64,000 nucleotides of DNA from IMG/VR virus record IMGVR_UViG_3300013233_000235, positions 140,042 to 204,041 of that record. The stretch is one strand, 5' to 3'. Numbering within the stretch: the first letter of the stretch is position 1; each line of letters begins with the position of its first letter. Shown piece by piece: positions 9,726 through 63,179 of the stretch. The notes below the pieces were generated by a model. It searched no databases. It worked only from the letters and a program-made list of their open reading frames with translations, and was not told the DNA's origin. The translations under genes and the position numbers were made by a program.

Positions 9726-9834
9726 AAGTCAGCCCCTTCGGGGGCTTTCTTTTTTATTTGTTTCCATACATTTTCAGAACCATATAACTACTATGAAGAG
9801 GCATCTTGATCTCTTACATTGGAGTTTAGTTATG
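9726..9834 (+). promoter_or_regulatory. Family-A cassette repeat copy 1 (terminator + early promoter + hairpin + SD)
   Basis: GCCCC-TTCG-GGGGC-TTTCTTTTTT ... CATATAAC-TACT-ATG-AAGAGG-CATCTTGA-TCTCTT ... GGAGTTTAGTT-ATG. Confidence 0.9.
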
Positions 9835-10440
9835 AATGACTTATTAATGCGCTTAGTTGTCACCAGTGGTGTTAAGCTGAGATGTGACCACCGGGTGGTT
9901 GCGGTATCGCCCGATCGAGCCTGTACGTGGGCGGCGATACTAACCATTGGGGCTGAACACCCCATCCTCCCAACCATGGGTGGTTGGGATAATGTCCACG
10001 CCGTCCCACTAGCCACACCCGGTCGGGGGGTGCTAAACGACAACGATGCCACCCGACGGTTTACCCAGGCGATCGTAGATGGGGTCGGGCGTGGGCACGG
10101 GCTTCTATCAGACCGTACACGTGCCATACAGGGCCTCAACATGGGTGTGAGACTGCCGGAGTTGTTTGAGGGATACATGTGGTCAAAACTGGCCACAAGA
10201 CATGGGCTGGGTAACAGCCGGGCACTTTTTTACGCTGCATACGGGCTGTGCGAGCGGCAGGGCGACTGGTGGGAGGTACTGACCCACATGGAAGAGTACC
10301 AGCGTAGCGCACGCCAGCTTGTTGGGTTGGCTGGTGTGCGTACAGGGGGGGATCACGGGCTACTGTATATGAACAGTCGCCCGGAGTTACGAGATGCTGC
10401 ATTGGACACACTCATCGAGTATGTAAGGGGGGTGAAATGA
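9832..10440 (+). CDS. Hypothetical protein, 'CxW..P' family
   Basis: DRACTWAAILTIGAEHPIL; true start follows the repeat's SD. Confidence 0.75.
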   Translation: MNDLLMRLVVTSGVKLRCDHRVVAVSPDRACTWAAILTIGAEHPILPTMGGWDNVHAVPLATPGRGVLNDNDATRRFTQAIVDGVGRGHGLLSDRTRAIQGLNMGVRLPELFEGYMWSKLATRHGLGNSRALFYAAYGLCERQGDWWEVLTHMEEYQRSARQLVGLAGVRTGGDHGLLYMNSRPELRDAALDTLIEYVRGVK

Positions 10441-11366
10441 GTAGGGTGGTTAAAGAGCAGTTCGGCCCACTCCACGAGATGTTGCTCGCATCAATGTCAT
10501 CCCATGGGCGTAACCGGCTGGTAAGTATGACCGGCATGGGTGTGGACGGCACCTGGTGGGATAGGGTGCTCACAAAGGGCCGTCGCATCACACCAACGAA
10601 GTTGTGGTCCTACCTGGATAACGTCTACGATCCCGCAAAGGACCCCTTTACCCCCCGTGAACTTATTGATGCCGCTATTGAGTGGGACTGGGGGGTAGGG
10701 GTAACACCAACCAATGCTGCGGCCACGAGCCCCATCGTTAAGGAGTTCTGGTGGATCAGGGTTAACCACCACATCAGCACTACCCAGCTGTGTAGGTCCA
10801 TACACATGTGCTCAAGCCAAGTGTACAACATGGAGTCCGGCGACCGAGGGTGCTCATTAGAGCACAGCCTGCAACTGGCAGAGGCATTTATAAGCATCGG
10901 TGTAAGCAGAGAGTTGGTAGCCGCCGCCATTCTCAGATCTTTCTGCCCAGATCCTCGCCGTCATGCGCTGATGGGTACCGTGCTGAACATACTGGTTATG
11001 AGCCGGTGTACGTTAGCACCACTGCTGCTGATCATGGGTGGGCCTGATCTAACCAGAGCCCGCTTCCTGACTGGAGAGGGTGTTTCAATAACCACCATTG
11101 CGGCATGGACCCGGCATGCTACAAATAAGTATAGAGAGTTACGATCTATACTGGAGACGGGGGCCGTTGGTAACAGGCAGGTATTGTGGGAGGCACTTAT
11201 GATGAGGGATGTGCCCCAAGGTGGATTGGCAAAACACCTCGGTACAAACCCACGCCTATTTAAATACATGCTAGCCATAGGCCGAGGGGTTGGGGAATTG
11301 GATCTCACTCCGATCCAAAATATGCCATTGCGGGACGATGTTATAACGGGGGTTTACGTATGCTAA
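10437..11366 (+). CDS. XRE-type HTH-containing protein
   Basis: RVNHHISTTQLCRSIHMCSSQVYNMESGDRGCSLEHSLQLAEAF; second degenerate HTH near the C-terminus. Confidence 0.7.
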   Translation: MSRVVKEQFGPLHEMLLASMSSHGRNRLVSMTGMGVDGTWWDRVLTKGRRITPTKLWSYLDNVYDPAKDPFTPRELIDAAIEWDWGVGVTPTNAAATSPIVKEFWWIRVNHHISTTQLCRSIHMCSSQVYNMESGDRGCSLEHSLQLAEAFISIGVSRELVAAAILRSFCPDPRRHALMGTVLNILVMSRCTLAPLLLIMGGPDLTRARFLTGEGVSITTIAAWTRHATNKYRELRSILETGAVGNRQVLWEALMMRDVPQGGLAKHLGTNPRLFKYMLAIGRGVGELDLTPIQNMPLRDDVITGVYVC

Positions 11367-11749
11367 ATACGCTGGTTAAGCAGGGGCCGTTCACGGTCCC
11401 TACCGGTCTATCGGATAGAGCGCTACTGAGGGTAATATCGGCCAATATACCCCACATCCCCACCATGCACCGTGACCCCGCCGCAGTGGTGGTGGCATTG
11501 GCCATGGTGTGGGGAAGCATGTGCACAGAAGATCGACGAGATCTGTATGCCAACTACAGGACTGGATTGGACATTTACTTATGTCCAGACGAATACGCTG
11601 TCAAAATAAATGGGTTGAAATCACCCATAGTCGCAGCCGAATGCGGTATGTGGGTCAGATCACTACCAGCGGATGTCCGCAAACGGCTTACCCACATGGT
11701 GAGTAAAGCCATATCGAAATACCGGGCGGATACCCCGCCACCAACATAG
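11360..11749 (+). CDS. Hypothetical protein
   Basis: Overlapping ORF in the operon; SD GGGGG. Confidence 0.65.
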   Translation: MLNTLVKQGPFTVPTGLSDRALLRVISANIPHIPTMHRDPAAVVVALAMVWGSMCTEDRRDLYANYRTGLDIYLCPDEYAVKINGLKSPIVAAECGMWVRSLPADVRKRLTHMVSKAISKYRADTPPPT

Positions 11750-11778
11750 GGTGCACATTGCGTCCCGAGGAGCTAGTA

Positions 11779-12543
11779 ATGATTAAAACTGTAGAAGAAC
11801 TGAATGAAGTATTGCCCGAGGGCTACCTCGCCGAGATTGGTGAGGGTAGTGGGGATGACACACACCACCAGCTTACCGTGATGAGAGGGGATGCACTGAT
11901 CATTAAGTATCTGTACAATGCCAACAGGTTCCCTAACATCTGGGTAGATGGGGACTACCTCGCCATTGTACAAAGCATAGACCGTAGCTGCATCCGGTTC
12001 TATCGGTTGGACATGGTGGGACAGGGGATGCTCTACAGCCTCATCTTCACCGGGTATGTGTTCGAGGTACCCGTGAGTATGTTAGAGGATGTGGTGGCCA
12101 CTCTACGGGCTTTAGAACTGGCTATAACTGCATACACCCCTGGCTTGGTGGACGTCGAGTACGCATCTTTGGCGCCGGGGGCATCCGCGATGTTTAAACA
12201 CATGGCTGTATCAAGGGGGTTCATACAGAAGAACCGTGGGGCAAGGTTGCACAGCGATTACTACATCCGTGACCCCGAGAATGGTGTGTCGCTGTATGAG
12301 AACACACTTTACCGGGAGGGCCGATGGTTTGGAGAAGGGGAGTACACAACGTTCGACGTGCGTATGGATGCTACCCGCTGGTCTATCTCTAACAGGATTC
12401 GCACAGGCACTGGTAAGAGTATCAGTCAGTGCATCAACGTGTATCGCCCAGAGCTGGCGCCTGGCCAGGCAGCCATGGTGTCGCTCATAAACGAATCACA
12501 CATGGTGGAGTTATTAGCTAACTCCACTGTTGTGGTTGCATAG
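11779..12543 (+). CDS. Hypothetical protein
   Basis: SD GAGGAG before ATG 11779. Confidence 0.7.
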   Translation: MIKTVEELNEVLPEGYLAEIGEGSGDDTHHQLTVMRGDALIIKYLYNANRFPNIWVDGDYLAIVQSIDRSCIRFYRLDMVGQGMLYSLIFTGYVFEVPVSMLEDVVATLRALELAITAYTPGLVDVEYASLAPGASAMFKHMAVSRGFIQKNRGARLHSDYYIRDPENGVSLYENTLYREGRWFGEGEYTTFDVRMDATRWSISNRIRTGTGKSISQCINVYRPELAPGQAAMVSLINESHMVELLANSTVVVA

Positions 12544-12592
12544 TGGGCACGGGGCTTTCTTAACCGTAAGCCCCATAGCTGTGTATGTGATG

Positions 12593-12695
12593 GCCCCCTC
12601 GGGGGCTTTCTTTTTTATTTGTTTCCATACATTTTCAGAACTATATAACTTGTATGAAGAGACATCTTGATCTCTTGTATAGGAGTTTAGTTATG
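12593..12695 (+). promoter_or_regulatory. Family-A cassette repeat copy 2
   Basis: Same architecture; loop CATCTTGA. Confidence 0.9.
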
Positions 12696-13430
12696 AGTAA
12701 AATGGTTAACTCGCTTAAGAAGGTGCCCAATACACCACGCAATTTCATGCACGAGGGGCGCCTTAGAAACCTCTTGGTACATATGCGGGAGTCGGACCCA
12801 TCCGCTATTACGCCAGAGAACATGTTCGTCATGGCGGACATCCCGGTAGATTTTACCCGGCTGGCTTTACCCGAGATCCACGCCAGTGGTGCGACCCAGC
12901 CGATTTCTATCGCCGCCCTGACACGTCTTATCAACGGTGTCCAAATTGGCCGCATACGGTCGACAGATGGGTCGTTTGTGGTGGCTGCCTTTCCTAGATG
13001 GTATGATTCGGGCGCTGGTGCTATTAGCGTCGCCATATGTGTGGAAGGGGCGACAAATTCGGCTCTGGATATTAACATTATACATGGTCGGCGTATACTC
13101 CATGTTGCATGTGGGCATAAGCGGGCGTGGATAATCACGGATCTGGGTGCATGGCTTGTAGGCTGGGATGTCGATAGCCAGGGATCTGTACATATCCAGG
13201 AAGGGGCGGTACCACTCGGCGATGGGGGCCCATTGTACAACACTCGCATCCAGATGATCTATAATGCGGATGTGGATGAAGATAACAATCTTACATACAC
13301 GGCCGTATGCTATAATGGGGGGGAACCAACCGCTGCATACGAGGTCTGCGTATCCCCGATGACAGGTCAACACGATGCACCGTCCGATATGAGTGTGTCC
13401 GAATTGATGGACACACTTAAAACAAACTAA
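12693..13430 (+). CDS. Hypothetical protein, paralog of 62263-63030
   Basis: RLRNLL, AWIITDLGAWL, GGPL..MIYNADV shared with 62263. Confidence 0.8.
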   Translation: MSKMVNSLKKVPNTPRNFMHEGRLRNLLVHMRESDPSAITPENMFVMADIPVDFTRLALPEIHASGATQPISIAALTRLINGVQIGRIRSTDGSFVVAAFPRWYDSGAGAISVAICVEGATNSALDINIIHGRRILHVACGHKRAWIITDLGAWLVGWDVDSQGSVHIQEGAVPLGDGGPLYNTRIQMIYNADVDEDNNLTYTAVCYNGGEPTAAYEVCVSPMTGQHDAPSDMSVSELMDTLKTN

Positions 13431-13440
13431 GGAGTTAGAC

Positions 13441-13845
13441 ATGAACCGAGTAAGCTTAGTGAGAGCGCTAAAAGAGTTTTGTAAGTCCACGGGCACCAAG
13501 CTATCCGATTACGTGGTAGGTGCAGGTGGTGCCATGATGTTGGAGAGTCGCACTTTGCGCTCCGAAACCGATGATGTGGATGTTGCTACTTCACACCGGG
13601 TGTGGGATCTGTTGTACAAGTTACCACACCGGGAAGAGTATTTCGGGGACACTGAGATACGTGCCTTTGGCAAAGTGGATGTACACCTGGTTGATAACCC
13701 GGTGGTTATTGAAACACTGGTATCAAAAGAGGGTGTCATATATTGGGACCCTGAGACCGTGCTACGGTTCAAGCAATACCTCAACAGAGATAAGGATCAG
13801 AAGGATATAACCGCCCTAAAGAAGTACATCGCTAGTAATAAGTAA
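13441..13845 (+). CDS. Pol-beta superfamily nucleotidyltransferase-like protein
   Basis: YVVGAGGAMML..LRSETDDVDV and C-terminal NRDKDQKDI; SD AGGAG. Confidence 0.7.
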   Translation: MNRVSLVRALKEFCKSTGTKLSDYVVGAGGAMMLESRTLRSETDDVDVATSHRVWDLLYKLPHREEYFGDTEIRAFGKVDVHLVDNPVVIETLVSKEGVIYWDPETVLRFKQYLNRDKDQKDITALKKYIASNK

Positions 13846-13846
13846 T

Positions 13847-13957
13847 AAGTCAGCCCCTTCGGGGGCTTTCCTTTTTATTTGTTTCCATCAATTCTTAGAA
13901 CTATATAACTTGTATGAAGAGACACTTTGATCTCTTATTGTGAAGGATGTTGATATG
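13847..13957 (+). promoter_or_regulatory. Family-A cassette repeat copy 3 (divergent 3' end)
   Basis: Terminator, TATATAAC and CACTTTGA-loop hairpin are conserved; SD is AAGGA. Confidence 0.9.
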
Positions 13958-14047
13958 AGTAAAGTATGTAAGAACCCCACAGGCCCAAATGGCCGGGTTA
14001 GTTACGGACTCGCCCACGGTACCACCCTCTCCAACGAGCCACACTAG
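13955..14047 (+). CDS. 30-aa peptide, first ORF of the cassette
   Basis: MSKVCKNPTGPNGRVSYGLAHGTTLSNEPH; SD AAGGA; starts ATGAGTAAAG like other cassette genes. Confidence 0.5.
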   Translation: MSKVCKNPTGPNGRVSYGLAHGTTLSNEPH

Positions 14048-14060
14048 GGATAAAGGCGCA

Positions 14061-14690
14061 ATGACCAACCATAGGGTTAGCCCCAACTACACACCCCCAG
14101 CAACCCCGCTAGGCGATTATCTGCGTGCCGTCATGGCGCACCAGGATATAACCTGGAGGGGACTTTCCAATCGCGTGGGATGTACACCCATCTCATTGGC
14201 CGCCATCGCATCAGGTGAATCCCGCTTTCCGGATGTATCCCAAGAAAACCTTCTGATGTATTGTAAACACGTTTACAAAGATAGGTTTTGTAAGGATGCT
14301 TGGCGCAGAGCTATGTCCGGCATACCAACGGGTAATAAGGAGGTGCACGCAGCAATGGCCACCCCTTTGGGGGACGCTATGCGGGAGTTCCGCCGAGAGC
14401 ATGGGATCACCTATAGCCAGTTCGCCCGCATGTGTGGTATCAATCACACGTACCTGCGGTCAATCGAGCGTGGTAAAGTGAAACTTAGCTTTGCCAACGG
14501 CGTTTATATATCAAAAGGTATACGCGCCAATGGGGACCTAGATGTGGCAGCGACACGCCTACTTGATTTGGTGTCTAGCACCATGGTGCAACCCACTTAC
14601 ACGGATATGGCTATTAGAATATCCGCCCTTAATGAAACCAAACAACGCAGGCTTTCTGACCTGCTACTTAAGTTGGAGACAGAGAAATGA
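14061..14690 (+). CDS. Tandem XRE-type HTH protein
   Basis: Two TPLGD-led HTHs, e.g. FRREHGITYSQFARMCGINHTYLRSIERG. Confidence 0.8.
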   Translation: MTNHRVSPNYTPPATPLGDYLRAVMAHQDITWRGLSNRVGCTPISLAAIASGESRFPDVSQENLLMYCKHVYKDRFCKDAWRRAMSGIPTGNKEVHAAMATPLGDAMREFRREHGITYSQFARMCGINHTYLRSIERGKVKLSFANGVYISKGIRANGDLDVAATRLLDLVSSTMVQPTYTDMAIRISALNETKQRRLSDLLLKLETEK

Positions 14691-14929
14691 ATAATGCCGT
14701 AACAAGATACATCAAACAGTTCGTACCAATGCATCCCGAGCGGATTTCCAAGATGGGTAAGGCCATCGGGTGGGATGGTAATGAGCTATACCACTGGCTG
14801 CGTGGTGAACGCCCAAACCCATCCTTGGCGTACATGGAGCGGATCTCCCGTTACCTGAGCCGGGGTAACCCTGAGTTTGAACCAATCCGGTTCGATCAGC
14901 TAATAGAAGGAGTGAACAAACGTGATTGA
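14687..14929 (+). CDS. Small Cro/XRE-like HTH protein
   Basis: ISKMGKAIGWDGNELYHWLRGERPNPSLAYMERISRYL. Confidence 0.7.
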   Translation: MNNAVTRYIKQFVPMHPERISKMGKAIGWDGNELYHWLRGERPNPSLAYMERISRYLSRGNPEFEPIRFDQLIEGVNKRD

Positions 14930-15440
14930 GAAAACAGATGTAAGAAAGCTGTGGCTCATGGGTCGCATGGCCGGTATGGTTGACACCATCCGTGGTGAGC
15001 GGATGGCTGGTAATATACACATACCCATTGGGGAGCATATGCGGGATGGTGTGTACAAGCACCAGTTTGTGAACGATAAGCTGGTACGGTCCATTGCGCA
15101 GATCCGAGCGGTGATATTGGCGGCCTTAGTCGCCCCACCGGCTGAGTACCTGCCGATACTGGCACTGCTGAGCCCCGAAAACCCCGTCCCATATGGTAAA
15201 GGTTGGCCTGAAGAGTATGCCCCCGTGCATATGGCGGTGCACGGGTGCTACTTACTAAACACCCCCCTGCTATTGACCGAATTGGTGGAGGTGGTTACCT
15301 ACAGCCTCTTCGACATCCCTGATGAAAACATGGATGTGGCCATTGCCGCGATTCGGTCCTACTACGCTATGGGGGCCACCGGGGAGTCGCTAGCATTGTA
15401 CGAGGCATTAGAGGTCTATGACACCATCCCAAAAGGGTAG
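14922..15440 (+). CDS. Hypothetical protein
   Basis: GTG start with SD AAGGAG; overlaps the upstream stop. Confidence 0.7.
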   Translation: MIEKTDVRKLWLMGRMAGMVDTIRGERMAGNIHIPIGEHMRDGVYKHQFVNDKLVRSIAQIRAVILAALVAPPAEYLPILALLSPENPVPYGKGWPEEYAPVHMAVHGCYLLNTPLLLTELVEVVTYSLFDIPDENMDVAIAAIRSYYAMGATGESLALYEALEVYDTIPKG

Positions 15441-15447
15441 ATGCACA

Positions 15448-15687
15448 TTGCCCCCAACCTCACCATGTGGTGCATGGTTGGATAAGCGTGTACGTGAGGG
15501 GGTGATAACTAGGGGCCAGTGGGTGGCTGCACTACCCATCGCGTATGGTACCTGGAGGAAGATCGAACTGGGTCGTATCCCCATTACCGAGGCGACAGCC
15601 ATGCGCCTACAGCGGACTGTTATACGTGTGTTGGGTCACGACCACTTAGATAGTTGGTGGGGTTGTGTTAACACACACCCGCTGTAA
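15448..15687 (+). CDS. Small XRE-like HTH protein
   Basis: TSPCGAWLDKRVREGVITRGQWVAALPIAYGTWRKIELGRIPIT; start uncertain (TTG 15448 or ATG 15418). Confidence 0.6.
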   Translation: MPPTSPCGAWLDKRVREGVITRGQWVAALPIAYGTWRKIELGRIPITEATAMRLQRTVIRVLGHDHLDSWWGCVNTHPL

Positions 15688-15700
15688 ATTGCGGCATAAC

Positions 15701-15811
15701 AAGACTCCCTTAATCGGGAGTCTTTCTTTTTTATTTGTTTCCATACATTCTTAAGACTATATAACTTGTATGAAGAGACGCATTGATCTCTTGTATAGGA
15801 GTTTAGTTATG
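15701..15811 (+). promoter_or_regulatory. Family-A cassette repeat copy 4 (different terminator hairpin)
   Basis: AAGACTCCC-TTAATC-GGGAGTCTT, then the conserved core; loop CGCATTGA. Confidence 0.9.
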
Positions 15812-16351
15812 AACGAAGAATTATCTAAAGCGTGTGCATCCATAGCGGATACCCCGCAGTTGGAATTGACATTTGATGTCAACCGCATTAGCGGTATGCC
15901 CGATGGGACAAGTGCCAATATCTTGTCACGATTGTTGGGTGTTCCGCTATCATTCCTAACTGCGGTTGCCGGGGTGAGTTGCAAGAAAGCCGCTCTGGCG
16001 AATATTTGCACAGCAGTAACACGCCCCGGCCTATCGGTGGTATACGCCGTACGGGGCGGTACACTGCATGTACAATTCTTGGTTGCTGGGGAGTACGAGC
16101 ATCTACGGATAGATGCCCCTGAGGATCCCATTCTAGGCATGGGGGTGTCGGGGTTAACCGCATGGGTGGTTACCACACAGGGTGTCTACAAACACCAGTT
16201 GAATGACTTCGAGCCCCCGCAAGTGTTTACATACCCTATAACGGGTATAACGGGCATGGCGGTAAGTGGTACGGGGATCATCATTGATGTCTTGCTGCCC
16301 GACGGTGTTGAGCGATCAATGCATCTGCGTGTGGAGGCCGATAGTGAATAA
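15809..16351 (+). CDS. Hypothetical protein, distant member of the 12693/62263 family
   Basis: ILGMGVSGLTAWVVTTQGVY vs ILHVACGHKRAWIITDLGAW. Confidence 0.7.
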   Translation: MNEELSKACASIADTPQLELTFDVNRISGMPDGTSANILSRLLGVPLSFLTAVAGVSCKKAALANICTAVTRPGLSVVYAVRGGTLHVQFLVAGEYEHLRIDAPEDPILGMGVSGLTAWVVTTQGVYKHQLNDFEPPQVFTYPITGITGMAVSGTGIIIDVLLPDGVERSMHLRVEADSE

Positions 16352-16967
16352 GTCCATATTAATGGTCTGCGACCCCAAGATCTTTGCTGTGCAGGATCGG
16401 TATCTGGTAACCAGACCTGACAGACCCTGTACGTGGAGAACACTGCATCGGCTGGCCCGCACTTACCCAATCGTTGACAGATACCTAAGTGTTGGGTGCC
16501 TGCTGCCAAATCCTGCCCCACACCGCCGTAGCAAGTTCATAGACGAAGGCACCGCCGAACTGTACGGCATTATCGCAGACTATGTGGCCAGTGGGTACGC
16601 CCACTATAAGTTCGGAGTAGAGGTCGCCAAACACCTGCGCGCCACCACATGTGTGCAGAGCATGAGTGGTACGCTGAACTGGCTGGCTATCTTACCACAC
16701 GTCTATCCGGAGTTACGCCCACTTGTGTTAAAGATACATGGCTTGGATGGGTTAGATAGCGTTATGGTTGCTAAGGCCGTGCGGTTAGCTATAAGCATAT
16801 CTAAGTACAGGCACCGCCGGACCACCTATTCCGAGGTATACGGAATAACGCCAGCAAACGAACGACAGTTGTTCAGCAGAGGATACACCTGCAAACATAA
16901 AGAAAAGATTATATCTAACCTAAAAGAGGGGGGCGAGTTATGGGATACATCATCGGTTCTATGGTAA
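16344..16967 (+). CDS. Hypothetical protein, 'CxW..P' family, HTH-like C-terminus
   Basis: DRPCTWRTLHRLARTYPIV; GTG start with SD GGAGG. Confidence 0.75.
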   Translation: MNKSILMVCDPKIFAVQDRYLVTRPDRPCTWRTLHRLARTYPIVDRYLSVGCLLPNPAPHRRSKFIDEGTAELYGIIADYVASGYAHYKFGVEVAKHLRATTCVQSMSGTLNWLAILPHVYPELRPLVLKIHGLDGLDSVMVAKAVRLAISISKYRHRRTTYSEVYGITPANERQLFSRGYTCKHKEKIISNLKEGGELWDTSSVLW

Positions 16968-17680
16968 AGAGGCTACGGGAAGTACAAGGGCTATCTGTAA
17001 AGGGCATGGCCCTCTTATACGGGGTTGGTCACCAAAGTCTCCGTAATGCCGAACACGGGGTTTACTCGCTAACCCCGGATGCTTTCCAAAGTATCGCAAT
17101 GGCTAGCGAGGAAGTGTATGCTAAAGCGGGGTTTACAAGGGCAGAGATGGCCACTGCCGCTGCTGACATGTACCTGGCTAGACACCGTGAAGTCATGAAA
17201 GACTTCTCATCGAAGAAGGTTGGGCCACGTAAAGAGTATAAGGTGCTGTTACGTAACGCTCGCCTGAATGGACACATATCGTCAACGCTGCTAGCCCAAG
17301 AAATGGGCATAACCCCATACAACTTCGGTCAGTTGGAATGCGCGGGGAGATCTGTTAAGGGCCCCATGTTACACCGATGGTTATTAGCACTTGAACAATA
17401 CCAGTGTGAGCGGCCCGTGCTTATAGAGATAGTGGCTGCCAGATATGGGATCTCTATAAGTATAGCTGGGGAGGTGTTCAACCAGATATACAGTGCTATC
17501 CTGGCCAGCGGTATCACCACCCAACGGTACCTTAAAGAAACGGGTACCCGGTCAACTACGCTACAGGTGCTGAATGTGCACCGCAGGGTGATGTGGAACA
17601 TGTGCATGGCCCACAATCGGTGGGTGGACGATAATGGTTTATTAGGCGATAGTTGTAAAATAAATATGGAGGAGCTATAA
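16940..17680 (+). CDS. Tandem XRE-type HTH protein
   Basis: VKRLREVQGLSVKGMALLYGVGHQSLRNAEHG and ARLNGHISSTLLAQEMGITPYNFGQLECAG. Confidence 0.8.
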   Translation: MGYIIGSMVKRLREVQGLSVKGMALLYGVGHQSLRNAEHGVYSLTPDAFQSIAMASEEVYAKAGFTRAEMATAAADMYLARHREVMKDFSSKKVGPRKEYKVLLRNARLNGHISSTLLAQEMGITPYNFGQLECAGRSVKGPMLHRWLLALEQYQCERPVLIEIVAARYGISISIAGEVFNQIYSAILASGITTQRYLKETGTRSTTLQVLNVHRRVMWNMCMAHNRWVDDNGLLGDSCKINMEEL

Positions 17681-18348
17681 TGAACATTGGTTTACAACGG
17701 GCGCTGGCAGGGTCCATAACGGGTGTGGTCAGCGAGACTGCCCGGCGCGCCATACAGCGGGACGATGCATCTTGCAGTTGGTACACAATGCGTAGACTGG
17801 CCCTACTGCATCCGCAGGTTGGTACAGCACTCAACCTTAACAGGCTGCTACCCACGGTCATTCGCAACACCACCTCGCAGACGGTGTGTGATAACACCGG
17901 GGAGTTCTACAGCGAGATCAGTACACGGCTTAAGATAACACATGCAGACCACCCTGATCTGGAGGCGTGTCTGCGCCACCTGGGTACAGACACGCTGAGA
18001 CCGCACCCTGCCGATGCGATCAACTGGGTAAATATGCGTTACTCACCTGGGCACCTGTGGACCCTATTTGGCAAGATGTACGGACTAGGCGAGTTATCTA
18101 CCCACCATCTGAAGCAAGCTGTGTGGCTGGCTGCCGCCCTGGGCACGTACACGGTTCTGCCCAAAGATTACACGGCAATGTATGGGCTCACCAACCGTGA
18201 GGTCAGTTCGGTATTCTCCATTGGGCGAGGGACTAGAGAAAAGTTGGCGGCCCTGGATAAATGGTCCCAGGTGTCTCCACGGGTCTCAGCCCATGGGGAC
18301 CTGCCCATATTAACGCACTGGCTGATGTTATTGCAACTACACTCGTAA
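17680..18348 (+). CDS. Hypothetical protein, 'CxW..P' family
   Basis: DASCSWYTMRRLALLHPQV; SD GGAGGAG. Confidence 0.75.
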   Translation: MNIGLQRALAGSITGVVSETARRAIQRDDASCSWYTMRRLALLHPQVGTALNLNRLLPTVIRNTTSQTVCDNTGEFYSEISTRLKITHADHPDLEACLRHLGTDTLRPHPADAINWVNMRYSPGHLWTLFGKMYGLGELSTHHLKQAVWLAAALGTYTVLPKDYTAMYGLTNREVSSVFSIGRGTREKLAALDKWSQVSPRVSAHGDLPILTHWLMLLQLHS

Positions 18349-18407
18349 CAAACAAATCTGGGTATACTACCCTAACTAACGCCGCAGATGCGGCAAGGAT
18401 ATTGACT

Positions 18408-19106
18408 ATGGAAAACCAAAGAATAGAAGCAGTTGAAACCAATGCGGCAATTTTAGAGGTCATGTTAAACTGCGGGTATGACCCCACCTACAGTCACGAC
18501 ATGGCCGCAGGCCGGGTGACATTGGCCGACGCGACATTGGCCCGCATACACGCGGAGGACCACCGTATACCCGCCCCCCTCCGCCGTATTGTCGGCGGGA
18601 TTGACGAGCTGGTAGATCAGGAGCTGAATAGATTGGGGCACACGGCGGTCTCAGTGGAAGCCAATCTTGGCAAAGGCCTATGCTATTGGGCCGGATGGAA
18701 ATATAGGTATGTCAAAAGTGGTCAACGTATGTATCACGCACCAGCCCCCGTGGACATGTTGCTAGAGGCACACAGGATGTCTGGGGAGGCTGTGGATACC
18801 GGCTTACTGAAAGCCGTGCTCACAGTGGACGTATACAGCGACCGAGTGCAACGTATGGCTGTGGCGGCCACGATGTTCCGGACGGCCTACACACTGTCTC
18901 ATCCAGAGATGGCTGTGGCTGTAGGGTTGGAAAGGCCCGAGCTAGGGCGCTACCTATGTATGGGTGGGGATGAGTCGGGTGTACTGTTAGATGCGTCCAA
19001 GACGTTTTATCGGTACATGTGGACTCACCGGGTTAAGCTTGGCGAGCTCGTCCCCGACTGGCTCAACCCTGTTGATTTCAACAGCGCTTATGGTGAATCG
19101 ATATGA
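18408..19106 (+). CDS. Hypothetical protein with degenerate C-terminal XRE-HTH
   Basis: FRTAYTLSHPEMAVAVGLERPELGRYL; SD AAGGA. Confidence 0.65.
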   Translation: MENQRIEAVETNAAILEVMLNCGYDPTYSHDMAAGRVTLADATLARIHAEDHRIPAPLRRIVGGIDELVDQELNRLGHTAVSVEANLGKGLCYWAGWKYRYVKSGQRMYHAPAPVDMLLEAHRMSGEAVDTGLLKAVLTVDVYSDRVQRMAVAATMFRTAYTLSHPEMAVAVGLERPELGRYLCMGGDESGVLLDASKTFYRYMWTHRVKLGELVPDWLNPVDFNSAYGESI

Positions 19107-19696
19107 ATGAGTTGCTGACGAAGGTCTTGGGTGACCGCCAGCTAAACTTGACCCCGTCTGAAGAGAGGGCTATTTATACACCCGGCGTCGGTATGAGCTG
19201 GATAAGTCTTGGCAGGATTATCACCAATAACCCCATCCTGATGGGGCAGGGCTATTACGCCCATCTGTCAGCTGTACACTGCGATCCAAAAACATGCGTG
19301 TTAGTGGGTGGGGATGAGATGTCTACGGCTCTGGCTATCTCGATGAAAGAGTTAGCTACCTATGGTGATTCCACGTCATTGGATAACCATAAGTACTTCC
19401 TATCCAGGGGTGCCAAGCCTACTGGCATCATGGCGAGCTTGTGGATATACCACTTAGAGCGACATGGCATAACCAGTGCATCAGCGCTGTACAGAGAGGT
19501 GTATGGCCTAGATAAGCAACAGGCTAAGGCGGCGTGCGAGCTTGTCTGGGTGACCACCATGCGTGGGAGGACGGTCAGCAGGATCGCCAGCTATGCGGGT
19601 TACCGCGCCAAAGAGGTTTCCCAACTATGGGTGGTTGGGGCAAAGTCGTCCAAGAAGGATGAGGTAATCCACCGTTTACGGGAACTCATGGGGTAG
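19103..19696 (+). CDS. Hypothetical protein, 'CxW..P' family
   Basis: GMSWISLGRIITNNPIL; VYGLD..TVSRIASYAGYRAKEVSQLW. Confidence 0.75.
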   Translation: MNELLTKVLGDRQLNLTPSEERAIYTPGVGMSWISLGRIITNNPILMGQGYYAHLSAVHCDPKTCVLVGGDEMSTALAISMKELATYGDSTSLDNHKYFLSRGAKPTGIMASLWIYHLERHGITSASALYREVYGLDKQQAKAACELVWVTTMRGRTVSRIASYAGYRAKEVSQLWVVGAKSSKKDEVIHRLRELMG

Positions 19697-19711
19697 TTAA
19701 CCCCCAGAATA

Positions 19712-19818
19712 AAGTTAGCCCTTCGGGGCTTTCTTTTTTATTTGTTTCCCTATATTCTTAGAACTATATAACTTGTATGAAGAGACACTTTGATCTCTTG
19801 TATAGGAGTTTAGTTATG
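19712..19818 (+). promoter_or_regulatory. Family-A cassette repeat copy 5
   Basis: Conserved architecture; loop CACTTTGA, 3' block GTATAGGAG. Confidence 0.9.
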
Positions 19819-20403: not shown

Positions 20404-20434
20404 TACACACACGGTATATACCAGGAGCTTAATT

Positions 20435-21446: not shown

Positions 21447-21552
21447 AGTTAGCCCTTCGGGGCTTTCTTTTTTATTTGCTTCCCTATATTCTTAAGCCTA
21501 TATAACTTGTATGAAGAGACGCATTGATCTCTTGTATAGGAGTTTAGTTATG
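21447..21552 (+). promoter_or_regulatory. Family-A cassette repeat copy 6
   Basis: Conserved architecture; loop CGCATTGA, 3' block GTATAGGAG. Confidence 0.9.
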
Positions 21553-23492: not shown

Positions 23493-23603
23493 AAGTCAGC
23501 CCCGATTAAGGGGCTTTCTTTTTTATTTGTTTCGCCCATATGTCAGAACTATATAACTACTATGAAGAGACACTTTGATCTCTTACTTTGGAGTTTAGTT
23601 ATG
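23493..23603 (+). promoter_or_regulatory. Family-A cassette repeat copy 7
   Basis: Terminator loop GATTAA; loop CACTTTGA, 3' block ACTTTGGAG. Confidence 0.9.
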
Positions 23604-24329: not shown

Positions 24330-24435
24330 AATCTGGAATCAACGTATTTTCAATGACATATAACTAAAATGGATATAGGCGTTTTGACTTATATCTATTA
24401 ATGGCTTAACAGCCAGGAGTTTTACTATGACAAAT
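24330..24435 (+). promoter_or_regulatory. Family-B cassette repeat copy 1
   Basis: AATCTGGAATCAA..TCAATGACATATAAC-TAAA-ATG-GATATAGG-CGTTTTGA-CTTATATC..TGGCT-TAAC-AGCCA-GGAG..ATGACAAAT; near-identical to 58211-58314. Confidence 0.9.
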
Positions 24436-24768: not shown

Positions 24769-24838
24769 AGTCAGCCCCTTCGGGGGCTTTCTTTTTTATT
24801 TGTTTCCATACATTTTCAGAACTATATAACTTGTATGA
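24768..24838 (+). promoter_or_regulatory. Family-A repeat copy 8, partial (terminator + promoter; hairpin/SD replaced)
   Basis: Matches other copies up to TATATAACTTGTATGA, then diverges abruptly. Confidence 0.88.
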
Positions 24839-58210: not shown

Positions 58211-58314
58211 AATCTGGAATCAAGCATATCTCAATGACATATAACTAAAATGGATATAGGCGTTTTGACTTATATCACTATGGCTTAACAGCCAGGAGTT
58301 TTACTATGACAAAT
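58211..58314 (+). promoter_or_regulatory. Family-B cassette repeat copy 2
   Basis: Near-identical to 24330-24435, including ATGACAAAT. Confidence 0.9.
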
Positions 58315-58611: not shown

Positions 58612-58719
58612 AGTCAGCCCCTTCGGGGGCTTTCTTTTTTATTTGTTTCCCTATATTCTTAAGCCTATATAACTTGTATGAAGAGACGCATTGATCTCTT
58701 ACTTTGGAGTTTAGTTATG
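58611..58719 (+). promoter_or_regulatory. Family-A cassette repeat copy 9
   Basis: Loop CGCATTGA, 3' block ACTTTGGAG. Confidence 0.9.
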
Positions 58720-60728: not shown

Positions 60729-60837
60729 AGTTAGCCCTTCGGGGCTTTCTTTTTTATTTGTTTCGCGCATGTATCAGAACTATATAACTTGTATGAAGAG
60801 ACACTTTGATCTCTTATAGCGAAAGGGTTTAATTATG
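60729..60837 (+). promoter_or_regulatory. Family-A cassette repeat copy 10
   Basis: Loop CACTTTGA; divergent SD AAGGG. Confidence 0.9.
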
Positions 60838-62151
60838 AATGATTCAAATAGTAGCATGTATACCGACGCCTTCATCCGCCGGTCTTTAAAGAAAGCCCAC
60901 CTTGCGCACAGCCATGGTGAGACATCTGAGATGGCCGATGATCAGTATGACCAACTGATGTTTGTGTTGCACCAACGGGTCGGATCATTCCAACCGCTGC
61001 GACAGGCTTACCCAACACACGCCCCTGTAGAGGGTACGCCCGTCGAGCGCATAAAACGGGTGATGGGTATGTACCGGTTCACACTACCGGATGATACCCG
61101 GGTATATGCCCACTGGGGTGAGCAGATTATCGCAGCTGTTTACACGGGGGGTGTGTTAACTGCGGTGGGGGCTGAATCCAAGTGGTCCCAGGACCCCGGT
61201 GAGCTGGCAGAGGTTGGCATCCCCCCGGCTATCCCCCACATCGGCGATGCCGTTGTATACGGGTGGTCCAATAAAGTCACCGGCCGCTTCGAAGCCGTTT
61301 GTTTAAAGGCTGCCCAGTCACCCAGTCTGGAAGCGTTAGGATTCGACACCCCTCCCGCAGTGAATCCATTACTGGTATCATTACCAGCCATCAGTGTGGT
61401 CGGCGACAGGTTCCACACAACCTCCTACCATATAAACGATATCCTGGATTTTCCACCCACGATGGTATTCCCAGATGGTACCCCGGTCGATGCCCATAAC
61501 ACCGAGCTTGATTTCGACGGAACCTTCAAGTCAGATTCCCCGGATACCCACTCATGCCCAGCATGTGGTGGGGATGTTACTAAGCTTGATGGTAATGGTG
61601 TATACCAGTGCATCGTGGCAGCGGCCGGTTTACCGGGTGAGTGCCCCGGTCCGATGACGGCCATGATGAGTCTCGGTTCAGAGCTAGCCAAACTTTGCAG
61701 ATATACCCCAGACATGCCGGTGGGTTATACATTTGGGGATATGGCTCTGGAGTTTGATTTACCATTGATGGCGCTACAAGACTGGTTGCAGCGCATGCTG
61801 TTGATACACGGTACGGAGGATAACCACATCCCATACCGCACATATGCGGAAACTATGGCGGCCATCGCTGACAAAGATATGGTTAGCCGTATCGAGATGT
61901 ATCTGGGTGATATCCGGGTTATAGACATCTCTCCGGATAAGGTTATCCGGTTATCCAGCACCCTCACGCGGGGGGTTCAGCGCCTTGTTAACAACGCACT
62001 GCTGTCGTCAACTGCGTATGACCTGCTAATCCCACATGGGGATGCTGGTCCCGCAAATCTCGATGTGGATGATTTGCGGGACCATCCCGTCATTCTAGCG
62101 TTGCTGGAAGAGGCGCAAGATGCTGAAGCACGCCGCGCTGTTAATCTATAA
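60835..62151 (+). CDS. Catalytically dead NAD-ligase-derived protein 2
   Basis: MADDQYDQL; TRVYAHWGEQIIAAVYTGG; LGFDTP; CPACGG..YQC..ECPG. Confidence 0.8.
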   Translation: MNDSNSSMYTDAFIRRSLKKAHLAHSHGETSEMADDQYDQLMFVLHQRVGSFQPLRQAYPTHAPVEGTPVERIKRVMGMYRFTLPDDTRVYAHWGEQIIAAVYTGGVLTAVGAESKWSQDPGELAEVGIPPAIPHIGDAVVYGWSNKVTGRFEAVCLKAAQSPSLEALGFDTPPAVNPLLVSLPAISVVGDRFHTTSYHINDILDFPPTMVFPDGTPVDAHNTELDFDGTFKSDSPDTHSCPACGGDVTKLDGNGVYQCIVAAAGLPGECPGPMTAMMSLGSELAKLCRYTPDMPVGYTFGDMALEFDLPLMALQDWLQRMLLIHGTEDNHIPYRTYAETMAAIADKDMVSRIEMYLGDIRVIDISPDKVIRLSSTLTRGVQRLVNNALLSSTAYDLLIPHGDAGPANLDVDDLRDHPVILALLEEAQDAEARRAVNL

Positions 62152-62156
62152 GTAAC

Positions 62157-62265
62157 AAGTCAGCCCCTTCGGGGGCTTTCTTTTTTATTTGTTTCCATAC
62201 ATTCTCAAGACTATATAACTTGTATGAAGAGACACTTTGATCTCTTATAGTGGAGTTTAGTTATG
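62157..62265 (+). promoter_or_regulatory. Family-A cassette repeat copy 11
   Basis: Loop CACTTTGA, 3' block ATAGTGGAG. Confidence 0.9.
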
Positions 62266-63030
62266 AGTAAAGATACAGTGTGCAGTCTTACAGGTGATCC
62301 TGCTGACTCGCTGGTTACTTCCGATACCCCGCCTAGCCACTTTGCATCCCGCGATAGGCTGCGTAATTTTGTGTCTGTGCTGTGTGCCACGGGTGTTGTA
62401 AGGTTAAATGTTGGGGCTCTTTATTACCATGCGGATATTCCGTCCGACTTCGTCGAGCTGCTAATGCCGCACACCAGGGCTGGTGGCAAAGTTAAGGTAA
62501 AGCCTGATTTGGTAAATATGTCAACCGATATACGCATGTTAAGGCGCGATTCGGGGTCATCGTCACATGGAGTCATGGTGGCACCCATATCGACCACTGG
62601 TGCAGAGTTGCACGTGGCCGTATGCATGGAGGATGATGCAGGGTCTATTACAACCGAATTGTCTGTCAAAGGGTCCACCCTACTAGAGATAGCCTTTGAT
62701 GTAACATTTGGGGTAGGCCACCTATGGTTGATTACGGATGCTGGGGCGTGGCTGTACAGATGTGGGACCGACAGCGGTGGTAAGTTGCGAGCACCCGTTC
62801 CTTCCGAGCCGCGTGGGGGTGGTGGCCCATTGGGTGGCCGGGTGGTTAACATGGTCTATAGTGCGGATGTGAATACTGCGGGTGTGTTGGTATATTCTGC
62901 GGCCAATATCGGCATCGGGGTACAGGGAAAGACTTATGAGGTGACCATGTCTCCGGAAGGTGATGGCCAGGTCGGCGCCGGCGTGACCATGGGTGAAATG
63001 CTGGCTAATATATCGGGCAGCGAGGGGTGA
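62263..63030 (+). CDS. Hypothetical protein, paralog of 12693-13430
   Basis: RLRNFV, LWLITDAGAWL, GGPLGG..MVYSADV, YEVTMSP. Confidence 0.8.
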   Translation: MSKDTVCSLTGDPADSLVTSDTPPSHFASRDRLRNFVSVLCATGVVRLNVGALYYHADIPSDFVELLMPHTRAGGKVKVKPDLVNMSTDIRMLRRDSGSSSHGVMVAPISTTGAELHVAVCMEDDAGSITTELSVKGSTLLEIAFDVTFGVGHLWLITDAGAWLYRCGTDSGGKLRAPVPSEPRGGGGPLGGRVVNMVYSADVNTAGVLVYSAANIGIGVQGKTYEVTMSPEGDGQVGAGVTMGEMLANISGSEG

Positions 63031-63071
63031 TGCGTCCGCACTTTGCGGTTTAAGGTGCACCCCCTCCTATA

Positions 63072-63179
63072 AAGTTAGCCCCTTCGGGGCTTTCTTTTTT
63101 ATTTGCTTCCATACATTCTTAGAACTATATAACTACTATGAAGAGACACTTTGATCTCTTATATAGGAGTTTAGTTATG
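63072..63179 (+). promoter_or_regulatory. Family-A cassette repeat copy 12
   Basis: Loop CACTTTGA, 3' block ATATAGGAG. Confidence 0.9.

What the first reader, a model, noticed from the sequence alone, without database searches (positions are those of the whole stretch)
9796..63160. Conserved 5'-terminal RNA hairpin with a CRYNUUGA loop carried on two unrelated stems
Seen: directly after YATATAAC-N4-ATG, family A has AAGAGR-[CACTTTGA / CATCTTGA / CGCATTGA]-TCTCTT and family B has GATATAGG-[CGTTTTGA]-CTTATATC (24372-24395, 58253-58276). The stems share no sequence, but position, pairing and loop consensus are kept. Variants preserve pairing (A-U to G-U in the closing pair and in the CR/UG mini-stem), which fits a 3-nt loop plus bulged A. 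Inference: this is a structure- and loop-specific protein-binding tag on early mRNAs, for example for antitermination, translational control, stabilisation or export from the early infection compartment. I do not recognise it as a known family.
Basis: partly seen in the sequence, partly recalled or inferred. Interest (0 to 1): 0.85.

Follow-up and report, generated by a model that had tools for sequence, protein, structure and literature searches.

The report
Hairpin tag starting phage early mRNAs
An uncultured giant (phiKZ-like) phage starts nearly all of its predicted early messages with a small RNA hairpin whose loop letters are the same on two unrelated stems, which suggests an undescribed class-specific handle on early mRNAs; its function is untested and no related phage carries it.

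Summary
The window is the last 64 kb of a 204-kb IMG/VR contig from a distant phiKZ-like jumbo phage. It holds 14 copies of YATATAAC-N4-ATG, all on the + strand (0.15 expected). Thirteen are followed at once by a hairpin with loop C-R-Y-N-T-T-G-A: 11 have the stem AAGAGR/TCTCTT and 2 have GATATAGG/CTTATATC. The rest of the contig adds 10 + 3 copies. All 26 hairpins sit behind a promoter box and none lies elsewhere.

Each hairpin belongs to a modular cassette: intrinsic terminator, T-rich tract, phiKZ-type early promoter box, hairpin, Shine-Dalgarno, start codon. By the published box-6N-G(+1) geometry, the first ATG is not a start codon. Its G is the predicted transcription start, so the hairpin begins at +2.

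Wobble pairs occur only on the sense strand. The loop sits at a different distance from +1 in the two families, and the distance to the ribosome site also differs. These points favour an RNA element anchored at the 5' end over a DNA operator or a ribosome-site operator.

Rfam, the literature, IMG/VR, JGI metagenomes and GTDB genomes gave no relative, so wider covariation cannot be tested. The hairpin is weak (about -4 to -5.5 kcal/mol). Protein binding is inferred, and antitermination is disfavoured.

The parts
9781..9815 (+). Cassette core, family A: box CATATAAC 9781-9788, predicted +1 G 9795, hairpin 9796-9815 (AAGAGG / CATCTTGA / TCTCTT); real start codon 9832
12642..12676 (+). Cassette core, family A: box 12642-12649, +1 G 12656, hairpin 12657-12676 (loop CATCTTGA); start codon 12693
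13902..13936 (+). Cassette core, family A: box 13902-13909, +1 G 13916, hairpin 13917-13936 (loop CACTTTGA); start codon 13955
15758..15792 (+). Cassette core, family A: box 15758-15765, +1 G 15772, hairpin 15773-15792 (loop CGCATTGA); start codon 15809
19765..19799 (+). Cassette core, family A: box 19765-19772, +1 G 19779, hairpin 19780-19799 (loop CACTTTGA); start codon 19816
21499..21533 (+). Cassette core, family A, ahead of the NAD-dependent DNA ligase gene: box 21499-21506, +1 G 21513, hairpin 21514-21533 (loop CGCATTGA); start codon 21550
23550..23584 (+). Cassette core, family A: box 23550-23557, +1 G 23564, hairpin 23565-23584 (loop CACTTTGA); start codon 23601
24357..24395 (+). Cassette core, family B: box CATATAAC 24357-24364, +1 G 24371, hairpin 24372-24395 (GATATAGG / CGTTTTGA / CTTATATC; in this copy pairing can extend to 24368-24399)
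24402..24429 (+). Family B second leader hairpin TGGCT-TAAC-AGCCA (24402-24415) abutting SD GGAG (24416-24419) and start codon 24427
24823..24837 (+). A-type promoter box and predicted +1 G (24837) with NO CRYNUUGA hairpin downstream; the exception within the window
58238..58276 (+). Cassette core, family B: box 58238-58245, +1 G 58252, hairpin 58253-58276 (loop CGTTTTGA)
58281..58308 (+). Family B second leader hairpin TGGCT-TAAC-AGCCA (58281-58294), SD GGAG 58295-58298, start codon 58306
58666..58700 (+). Cassette core, family A: box 58666-58673, +1 G 58680, hairpin 58681-58700 (loop CGCATTGA); start codon 58717
60781..60815 (+). Cassette core, family A: box 60781-60788, +1 G 60795, hairpin 60796-60815 (loop CACTTTGA); start codon 60835
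62212..62246 (+). Cassette core, family A: box 62212-62219, +1 G 62226, hairpin 62227-62246 (loop CACTTTGA); start codon 62263
63126..63160 (+). Cassette core, family A: box 63126-63133, +1 G 63140, hairpin 63141-63160 (loop CACTTTGA); start codon 63177
9731..9756 (+). Intrinsic terminator (GC hairpin and T-run) that forms the upstream end of the cassette. Equivalent terminators start at 12592, 13852, 15701, 19717, 21451, 23498, 24292 and 24773. The same sequence is visible upstream of the boxes at 58666, 60781, 62212 and 63126.

Best explanation
The element is a cis-acting RNA stem-loop at the extreme 5' end of the early transcripts of a phiKZ-like jumbo phage (+2 to +21 in family A, +2 to +25 in family B). 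It belongs to a repeated modular cassette: intrinsic terminator, T-rich tract, early promoter box TATATAAC, six bases, G(+1), hairpin, Shine-Dalgarno, start codon. The cassette heads unrelated, mostly orphan early genes.

Most likely mechanism. The phage's own RNA polymerase starts at the G of the 'ATG'. The first 20-24 transcribed bases fold as soon as they leave the polymerase. This leaves at most one unpaired 5' base, which shields the message from 5'-end-dependent decay. The fold also displays an invariant loop, C-R-Y-N-U-U-G-A, which probably forms a C-G / R-U mini-stem, a 3-nt loop and a bulged A. That loop would serve as a class-specific handle for a trans-acting factor, phage or host, that decides the fate of early mRNAs (stability, timing of shut-off, or sorting).

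Shown: the sequence anatomy, the strand specificity, the restriction to promoter-proximal sites and the conservation footprint. Inferred: the start site (by homology of promoter geometry), the RNA level of action, the protective role and the existence of a binder.
For: - Non-random and exclusive. There are 14 boxes against 0.15 expected. All 26 hairpins in about 118 kb of the contig lie right after a box on the sense strand and none lies elsewhere; 0.2 are expected per window.
- Start-site geometry. Early promoters of phiKZ-type phages are an AT-rich box with the start 6 nt downstream, G in AR9 (PMC5312081, PMC7598289). phiKZ's own boxes read TATATTAC-N5-T-G. The nearest relative L121 reads TATATAAC-CTTAGT-G. 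Here the pattern is TATATAAC-N5-T-G. The resulting leaders of 37-56 nt fit phiKZ's 31-40 nt (PMC8244752).
- The contig is phiKZ-like. It encodes a split RNA polymerase beta subunit (phrog_2962, E 1e-100), and terminase, sheath and PhuZ homologues. Sigma-70-like sites are depleted.
- Conservation footprint over 21 family A copies. Positions -15..-6, -3..+6, +8 and +12..+21 are invariant. Positions -30..-16, +9..+11 and +22..+26 vary in up to 11 of 21 copies. Selection therefore acts on both arms and on five loop letters.
- Two stems, one loop. A and B share no arm sequence. Both start at +2 and share the loop letters. The chance that an 8-mer fits the A consensus is about 1/4096. Three pairs change on both sides.
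- Sense-strand specificity. Every non-Watson-Crick pair is G-U on the sense strand: the A closing-pair variant, pair 7 of B, and R2-U6. Each would be a C-A mismatch on the other strand.
- The loop lies at +8..+15 in A and +10..+17 in B, so it is not a fixed-distance duplex DNA element. The distance to the SD is 5 nt in A and about 16 nt in B, while the distance to +1 is constant. This ties the function to the 5' end.
- Downstream genes are unrelated, so cassette identity is not a by-product of gene duplication.
- 5'-terminal stem-loops are an established way to stabilise bacterial mRNA (Emory, Bouvet and Belasco 1992; Bouvet and Belasco 1992; both cited in PMC3997798).
Against: - There are no transcript data, so +1 is inferred.
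- The hairpin is weak: -4.0 (A), -3.4 (AAGAGG variant) and -5.5 kcal/mol (B). Leader z-scores against shuffles are near 0 for A. In 5 of 21 family A contexts the predicted pairing probability is 0.27 or lower.
- Known protective 5' hairpins need no particular loop, so protection alone does not explain the loop.
- No binder was identified.
- The five family B copies are identical, so 'two stems, one loop' is one independent comparison.
- Two of 30 box-bearing promoters lack the motif (window 24823; L010:11642 has another hairpin), so it is not obligatory.
- No relative carries it. phiKZ and L121 leaders show no uniform hairpin.
Confidence: 0.5

Rival explanations
1. Generic 5' protective hairpin with no specific binder. 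Only base-pairing of the 5' end matters. The loop letters are kept because they help the loop fold (C-G and R-U stacking), or because the cassettes are homogenised by recombination.
For: The hairpin starts at +2 in both families. Protection by a 5' stem-loop is well established (PMC3997798). The cassettes are near-identical over about 110 bp, as expected under gene conversion. A third leader (L010:11642) has a 5'-proximal hairpin with a different loop.
Against: Homogenisation does not explain why loop positions 2-4 vary freely while positions 1 and 5-8 never do in 21 copies. It also does not explain why family B, with wholly different arms, keeps the same loop letters. The predicted stability is low for a purely physical shield.
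Confidence: 0.2
2. Translational operator or switch. The pyrimidine 3' arm (CUCUU) can pair with the downstream SD (AGGAG), while the purine 5' arm (AAGAG) competes for it. The hairpin, alone or with a bound protein, would set ribosome access, as hairpin operators next to ribosome sites do in T4 (gp43) or MS2.
For: In family A an alternative fold pairing AUUGA-U-CUCUU with AGGAG-U-UUAGU is nearly iso-energetic with the 5' hairpin. It is the predicted optimum for the CGCAUUGA copies. The hairpin ends 5 nt before the SD, inside the 30S footprint. L121 leaders also place CUCCU 3-4 nt before AAGGA.
Against: Family B arms are not complementary to its SD. Its hairpin ends about 16 nt upstream of the SD, with a second hairpin in between. 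UUGA stays invariant when the SD-to-start spacer changes (UUUAGUU, GUUGAU, UUUAAUU), so that pairing does not covary. Complementarity between a pyrimidine tract and any SD is trivial.
Confidence: 0.12
3. DNA-level element. It would be either a palindromic operator at +2..+21 for a repressor that shuts off early promoters, or an initially transcribed or downstream promoter element read by the virion polymerase.
For: The position matches classic operators centred near +11. phiKZ late promoters are reported to depend on undefined downstream sequence (PMC7598289). In L121 an inverted repeat brackets the promoter box itself.
Against: A dimeric operator predicts conserved half-sites and a free spacer. 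Here the half-sites differ completely between A and B, while the asymmetric spacer is conserved. The symmetry is imperfect only in the G-T sense, which is strand-specific. The conserved letters are 2 bp further from +1 in B. Two promoters with the same box lack the element.
Confidence: 0.08
4. Antitermination site of the nut/boxB or put kind. The nascent hairpin, with or without a protein, would make the polymerase resistant to terminators.
For: A small hairpin in nascent RNA just downstream of early promoters, with a sequence-specific loop, is the boxB arrangement.
Against: Strong intrinsic terminators on the + strand lie only at the ends of units. Each is followed within about 35 nt by a new promoter, and none was found inside units. 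The loop is not a GNRA-like pentaloop. No boxA-like companion is conserved in the +22..+26 region, which varies.
Confidence: 0.04
5. Leaderless coding. Transcription would start at the A of the ATG, and the 'hairpin' would be the first codons of a short peptide, M-K-R-[H/R]-[F/L/I/V]-D-L-L.
For: The family A variants are synonymous or conservative in that frame: AGA/AGG, CAC/CAT, and NTT giving F, L, I or V. In the 37-nt class this ATG is in frame with the gene.
Against: The family B loop is read in another frame and gives an unrelated peptide. Some family A copies hit a stop after 8-9 codons (13902, 60781, 62212). Coding does not explain arm complementarity. Every gene has its own strong SD and ATG. 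Published starts for this promoter type are the G (PMC5312081).
Confidence: 0.02
6. Passenger sequence. The hairpin would have no function of its own and would simply ride inside a mobile or recombining terminator-promoter cassette.
For: The cassettes resemble PeSL-type repeated regulatory modules, which spread by recombination (PMC2839356, PMC4122927).
Against: The sharp footprint shows invariant arms and loop letters next to freely varying neighbours. A second arm pair carries the same loop.
Confidence: 0.04

Closest known systems
phiKZ / AR9 / phiR1-37 type early (virion RNA polymerase) promoters
   Same: There is an AT-rich box of about 8-10 nt centred near -10 and a T-rich tract upstream. 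T-G follows with the G six bases after the box. The promoters sit in front of operons of small orphan genes, in a genome encoding a split multisubunit RNA polymerase (PMC5312081, PMC7598289, PMC8244752).
   Different: The box is TATATAAC rather than TATATTAC. A uniform hairpin with a fixed loop follows the start. phiKZ's seven early leaders that I folded have no common hairpin or loop, and none is reported in the papers read.
PeSL cassettes (promoter-early stem-loop) of T4-like phages
   Same: Both are short composite terminator-plus-early-promoter modules. They are repeated many times with near identity and flank unrelated orphan genes (PMC4122927, PMC2839356).
   Different: In a PeSL the stem-loop is the terminator upstream of a sigma-70 promoter. 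Here the promoter is of the phiKZ type. A second, different hairpin lies downstream of the start inside the transcript, followed by a conserved ribosome site. A role in recombination could not be tested because there is no relative.
5'-terminal stabilising stem-loops (ompA, papA leaders; T7 gene 10 leader, the latter from my own knowledge)
   Same: The hairpin begins within one or two bases of the 5' end. In T7 the purine-rich initially transcribed bases pair with a pyrimidine tract, as in family A.
   Different: Those elements have no required loop sequence and are usually more stable. Here five loop letters are invariant on two different stems.
Lambda boxB / phage operator hairpins (MS2, PP7, T4 gp43 operator)
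   Same: Both are small hairpins whose loop, and in some cases a bulged A, is read by a protein. boxB lies in nascent early RNA.
   Different: The loop sequence and geometry do not match any of them. The position is fixed relative to the 5' end, not to a terminator-containing operon or to the ribosome site. No cognate protein is known.
N4 virion RNA polymerase hairpin promoters
   Same: Both involve a short stem, a possible 3-nt loop, and early genes transcribed by an injected polymerase.
   Different: N4 hairpins are DNA structures upstream of the start and are read by a single-subunit polymerase. Here the hairpin is downstream of the box and start, is wobble-paired only on the sense strand, and the phage is phiKZ-like.

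Membership tests
Any Rfam 15 family | Covariance-model score at or above the family's gathering threshold | tested here: not met
   No hit in the whole window at gathering thresholds. At E up to 10 on 23400-25000, six weak hits appeared and none overlaps a hairpin.
phiKZ-type early (vRNAP) promoter | Over-represented AT-rich box of about 8-10 nt upstream of early operons | tested here: met
   TATATAAC occurs 14 times on one strand against 0.15 expected. Positions -15..-6 are invariant in 21 copies.
phiKZ-type early (vRNAP) promoter | Start site (G) six bases after the box | not testable with these tools
   T-G is invariant at that offset here. It is also present in all 7 phiKZ boxes read and in L121. 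No transcript ends are available.
phiKZ-type early (vRNAP) promoter | Genome encodes phiKZ-like multisubunit RNA polymerase and core genes | tested here: met
   RNA polymerase beta subunit at L104:6317-7693 (phrog_2962, E 1e-100). Terminase, sheath, gp26/27 and PhuZ homologues. Virion proteins. Whether the subunit found belongs to the virion or the non-virion enzyme was not determined.
PeSL cassette | Composite terminator stem-loop plus early promoter, repeated, flanking variable orphan genes | tested here: met
PeSL cassette | Sigma-70 early promoter | tested here: not met
   No cassette passes the sigma-70 scan, and such sites are depleted in the region. The box lacks the final T of a -10 hexamer.
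PeSL cassette | Mediates indels or shuffling between related genomes | not testable with these tools
   No related genome was found.
5'-terminal protective stem-loop | At most about 1-2 unpaired bases at the RNA 5' end | tested here: inconclusive
   Met if +1 is the G (hairpin from +2). If +1 is the A, three bases are unpaired.
5'-terminal protective stem-loop | Lengthens mRNA half-life against RNase E/RppH-type decay | not testable with these tools
   Needs half-life measurements.
boxB/nut antitermination site | GNRA-like pentaloop on a 5-bp stem with an associated boxA | tested here: not met
   The loop is 8 nt, C-R-Y-N-U-U-G-A. The flanking +22..+26 region is variable.
boxB/nut antitermination site | Terminators within the operon that must be read through | tested here: not met
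   Strong + strand terminators lie only at unit ends, each followed by a new promoter.
N4-type hairpin promoter | DNA hairpin centred about 12 nt upstream of the start | tested here: not met
   The hairpin lies downstream of the box and the inferred start. G-T pairs occur only on the sense strand.
Ribosome-site operator hairpin (T4 gp43, MS2 type) | Hairpin overlaps or abuts the SD or start codon at a fixed distance | tested here: inconclusive
   It lies 5 nt upstream of the SD in A but about 16 nt upstream in B, with another hairpin between.

The most novel reading that the evidence does not exclude
The loop is the address label of a dedicated sorting system. A phage protein would recognise C-R-Y-N-U-U-G-A at the 5' end of transcripts made by the injected polymerase. 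It would use that label to move them out of the early infection compartment, to give them priority on ribosomes, or to destroy or silence the whole early class at the switch to middle and late expression. That would be the first cis-acting class tag on mRNAs of a nucleus-forming phage.
Probability: 0.25. Interest if true: 0.8.

Novelty: new variant of a known kind. Interest (0 to 1): 0.55.

Why it matters
Nucleus-forming jumbo phages transcribe early genes with an injected polymerase inside a separate early compartment. How early messages are marked, exported, translated and later switched off is unknown. No cis-element on early mRNAs is mentioned in the transcriptome papers or the 2026 review I read (PMC8244752, PMC10914365, PMC11512511, PMC13282480).

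A 20-24 nt element that is present on 26 of 30 predicted early leaders, absent elsewhere, and invariant in five loop letters across two unrelated stems is a concrete, mutable candidate for such a mark. It is small enough to test in reporters.

If it only protects the 5' end, it is still a compact module of terminator, promoter, stabiliser and ribosome site, of interest for phage engineering. The limits are that it is known from one uncultured genome and that nothing about its activity has been measured.

Tried and rejected
Searches for relatives. All failed or returned only chance matches.
- Eight IMG/VR pattern scans were run. One was wasted on a miscounted gap. The others returned only the source contig plus chance hits.
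- The JGI metagenome scan gave 58 single hits. None is preceded by the box, and the few with a TATA-like upstream were ordinary start codons.
- The GTDB genome scan gave 0 hits.
- The ligase and the 813-aa virion protein have no homologue above 30% identity among 5.8 billion proteins. A single-protein locus search found only the source contig itself. Megablast against GenBank phages found nothing.
- Xoo-sp14, the nearest named phage, was fetched around the homologous virion gene. That region is structural and not syntenic, so it gave no early promoters.

Ideas rejected.
- The conserved UUGA pairs with the SD-to-start spacer. Rejected because the spacer changes and UUGA does not.
- An inverted repeat brackets the box in this phage as it does in L121. 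Only a non-conserved 4-5 bp match is present.
- The tag is explained by duplicated genes. The downstream proteins are unrelated apart from two pairs.
- Several early proteins share a ligase-like N-terminus. Pfam and PHROGs give no support, and BLAST links only 60781 with 63126.

Other dead ends.
- One local pattern call was mis-specified and returned nothing.
- Supplementary TSS tables for phiKZ were not held.

Full report
What is there. The pattern YATATAAC-N4-ATG occurs 14 times in the window, always on the + strand, against 0.15 expected. Read with their flanks, the copies are the cores of a repeated intergenic cassette of about 110 bp. Its parts, in order, are:
- a GC-rich hairpin with a T-run (an intrinsic terminator);
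- a conserved T-rich tract;
- a variable stretch of about 15 nt;
- the box TATATAAC;
- four bases and then ATG;
- a hairpin;
- about five variable bases;
- GGAG or a similar Shine-Dalgarno;
- a spacer and the real start codon, 37-58 nt after the first ATG.
A mechanical scan for stems of at least 5 bp around the loop C[AG][CT]NTTGA finds 13 hairpins in the window. All are on the + strand, and each begins at the base after the ATG. Eleven have arms AAGAGR/TCTCTT (family A) and two have GATATAGG/CTTATATC (family B). Shuffled windows give 0.2. One box (24823) has no such hairpin.

Where it comes from. Pattern scans showed that the window is the last 64 kb of IMGVR_UViG_3300013233_000235, a 204,041-bp contig. 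The genome is a deep-branching phiKZ-like jumbo phage.
- An 813-aa virion protein is 23-30% identical to proteins of Xanthomonas, Pseudomonas, Ralstonia and Vibrio jumbo phages.
- The contig encodes homologues of phiKZ terminase (36%), tail sheath, gp26/27 and the PhuZ tubulin.
- It encodes a split RNA polymerase beta subunit (phrog_2962, E 1e-100).
- It also encodes an RNase H-like nuclease, a UvsX-like recombinase and baseplate and virion proteins.
Other fetched parts of the contig add 10 family A and 3 family B cassettes, with three more loop variants. They also add one B-type promoter followed by a different, stronger hairpin with loop AUUC. Across about 118 kb, all 26 hairpins with this loop follow a box and none lies elsewhere.

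Where transcription starts. The literature on phiKZ-type phages says that each has an over-represented AT-rich box centred near -10 upstream of early operons. In phiKZ and phiR1-37 the start is 6 nt downstream of the box, and in AR9 the motif ends in -(6N)-G+1 (PMC7598289, PMC5312081). phiKZ leaders are mostly 31-40 nt, and a T-rich motif lies upstream of -19 (PMC8244752). I read phiKZ's first 50 kb. All seven TATATTAC boxes are followed by five bases and then T-G. The nearest relative I could find, L121, has TATATAAC-CTTAGT-G. Here the pattern is TATATAAC-N5-T-G. So the G of the 'ATG' is the predicted +1, the ATG is not a codon, and the hairpin occupies +2..+21 (A) or +2..+25 (B). If a sigma-70 enzyme used TATAAC as a -10 element, the start would fall within two bases of the same place. 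However, the cassettes do not pass a sigma-70 scan, and such sites are depleted in the region. The start site remains an inference.

Is the structure selected? Over 21 family A copies the conservation footprint is sharp. Positions -15..-6, -3..+6, +8 and +12..+21 never vary. Positions -30..-16, -5/-4, +7, +9..+11 and +22..+26 vary in 3 to 11 copies. The changes inside the hairpin are these:
- A to G at +7, turning the closing A-U into G-U;
- A/G at loop position 2, opposite an invariant U6;
- C/U at position 3;
- any base at position 4.
Family B has arms with no similarity to A. It starts at the same +2 and has the loop CGUUUUGA, which fits the A consensus at all eight positions (about 1 in 4096 for a random 8-mer). 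On an alignment of the nine distinct hairpins, every cell pairs in the proposed structure. Three pairs change on both sides, and slid controls pair only 42-65%. All three double changes come from B, whose five copies are identical, so this is one independent comparison and not a phylogenetic covariation test.

RNA or DNA, 5' end or ribosome site. Every non-Watson-Crick pair is a G-U on the sense strand and would be a C-A mismatch on the other strand. This argues against a duplex palindrome or cruciform and for a single-stranded sense-strand structure, most simply the RNA. A dimeric operator would conserve half-sites and free the spacer, and here the opposite holds. The conserved loop letters are 2 nt further from +1 in B than in A, so they are not a fixed-distance duplex element of the promoter. 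The distance to +1 is the same in both families. The distance to the Shine-Dalgarno is 5 nt in A and about 16 nt in B, where a second hairpin (TGGCT-TAAC-AGCCA) intervenes. The function therefore looks anchored to the 5' end. The genes behind the cassettes are unrelated orphans, apart from an NAD-dependent ligase and two weak paralogue pairs. The cassette is therefore maintained independently of its cargo.

Energetics and an alternative fold. The hairpins are weak: -4.0 kcal/mol for A, -3.4 for the AAGAGG variant (for which the mini-stem with a bulged A is the predicted optimum) and -5.5 for B. In leader-plus-27-nt contexts the A hairpin has pairing probability of at least 0.75 in 14 of 21 copies, but 0.27 or lower in five. 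B is near 1.0 in four of five copies. In family A the 3' arm plus part of the loop can instead pair with the SD and spacer at almost equal energy. This makes a translational toggle conceivable. B lacks that option, however, and UUGA does not covary with the spacer. Marginal stability fits an element that needs a partner or non-canonical loop contacts. It counts against a purely physical shield.

Other functions weighed. Antitermination is unlikely. Strong + strand terminators lie only at unit ends, each directly followed by the next promoter. A leaderless peptide reading (M-K-R-[H/R]-[F/L/I/V]-D-L-L) fits the family A substitutions surprisingly well. It fails in three ways: B uses another frame, several copies contain stops, and it does not explain the complementarity.

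Comparison with what is known.
- Rfam has nothing at gathering thresholds, and nothing overlapping a hairpin at E up to 10.
- Full-text searches found no report of a 5' hairpin on jumbo-phage early mRNAs.
- The phiKZ and 201phi2-1 transcriptome papers describe promoters, terminators and some 5'-UTR-derived small RNAs, but no such element.
- phiKZ's own early leaders and those of L121 show no uniform hairpin or loop.
- As a whole, the cassette most resembles the PeSL terminator-promoter modules of T4-like phages (PMC4122927, PMC2839356), but with a phiKZ-type promoter and an added transcribed hairpin.
- The hairpin's position resembles the protective 5' stem-loops of ompA and papA (cited in PMC3997798) and, from my own knowledge, of T7 gene 10.
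- Its sequence-specific loop resembles protein-read hairpins such as boxB or coat-protein operators, without matching any of them.

Limits. I could not find any related genome carrying the cassette. IMG/VR, JGI metagenomes and GTDB genomes returned only the source contig or chance matches. The two proteins tried have no homologue above 30% identity. No expression data exist.

Verdict. The best reading is a 5'-terminal RNA stem-loop that marks the early transcripts of a phiKZ-like phage. It probably combines 5'-end protection with a loop read by an unknown factor. I put about 0.5 on that overall reading, and about 0.25 on a dedicated protein-read sorting or shut-off tag. It is a new variant of known kinds of element (leader hairpins, regulatory cassettes), not a new category. 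Interest is moderate to fairly high, because the element is clean, testable and bears on an open question in jumbo-phage biology. The score is tempered by single-genome support and by the absence of functional evidence.

Noticed in passing
L121:12614-12712, 13632-13715, 14937-15076 (Logan SRR14865146 contig, nearest relative by the 813-aa virion protein): In three of five putative early promoters, the box TATATA[AG]CC sits in the 'loop' of a 9-11 bp inverted repeat, GATTCACTA..TAGTGAATC. The right arm of the repeat contains the predicted +1 G. The substitutions give G-T pairs on the top strand. This could be an operator or a DNA-hairpin promoter. It is a different arrangement from the window.
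   Followed up: partly
window 43654-43683, - strand: A perfect 11-bp hairpin with loop GATATTGA lies near the 3' end of the 563-aa ORF 43559-45250. Its loop ends in the same TTGA, but it starts with G and is not next to a promoter box.
   Followed up: no
window 24823-24895: An A-type promoter box with the usual terminator upstream has no CRYNUUGA hairpin. Its 58-nt leader heads a run of + strand genes that reaches a baseplate assembly gene (30009-30929).
   Followed up: partly
L010:11642-11730 (source contig about 44019): A B-type promoter box is followed by a different, much stronger leader: an 11-bp hairpin with loop AUUC at +5..+30, then a second hairpin (-24 kcal/mol overall).
   Followed up: partly
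window 13955-14690: The cassette at 13902 leads to only a 30-aa ORF (13955-14047). A 233-aa ORF in another frame (13989-14690) overlaps it. This may be a frameshift, an assembly error or a leader peptide.
   Followed up: no
window 33219-39001, - strand: Three consecutive large proteins carry FG-GAP repeats (E 1e-17 to 1e-54) inside the structural gene block. They may be fibre or receptor-binding proteins.
   Followed up: no
window 9000-26000: Sigma-70-like promoter matches are depleted (12 found against 21.7 expected). This is consistent with independence from the host polymerase.
   Followed up: partly
window 12693-13430 with 62263-63030, and 60835-62151 with 63177-end: These are the only detectable paralogue pairs among the 28 first genes behind cassettes (28% and 40% identity). 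Many first genes start M-S-K (ATGAGTAAA).
   Followed up: partly
L104:7693-7760 and L010:12380-12460 (source contig): Two family A cassettes lack the upstream terminator and T-rich tract but keep -20 to the start codon unchanged. One of them directly follows the RNA polymerase beta-subunit gene. The functional core therefore starts near -20.
   Followed up: partly
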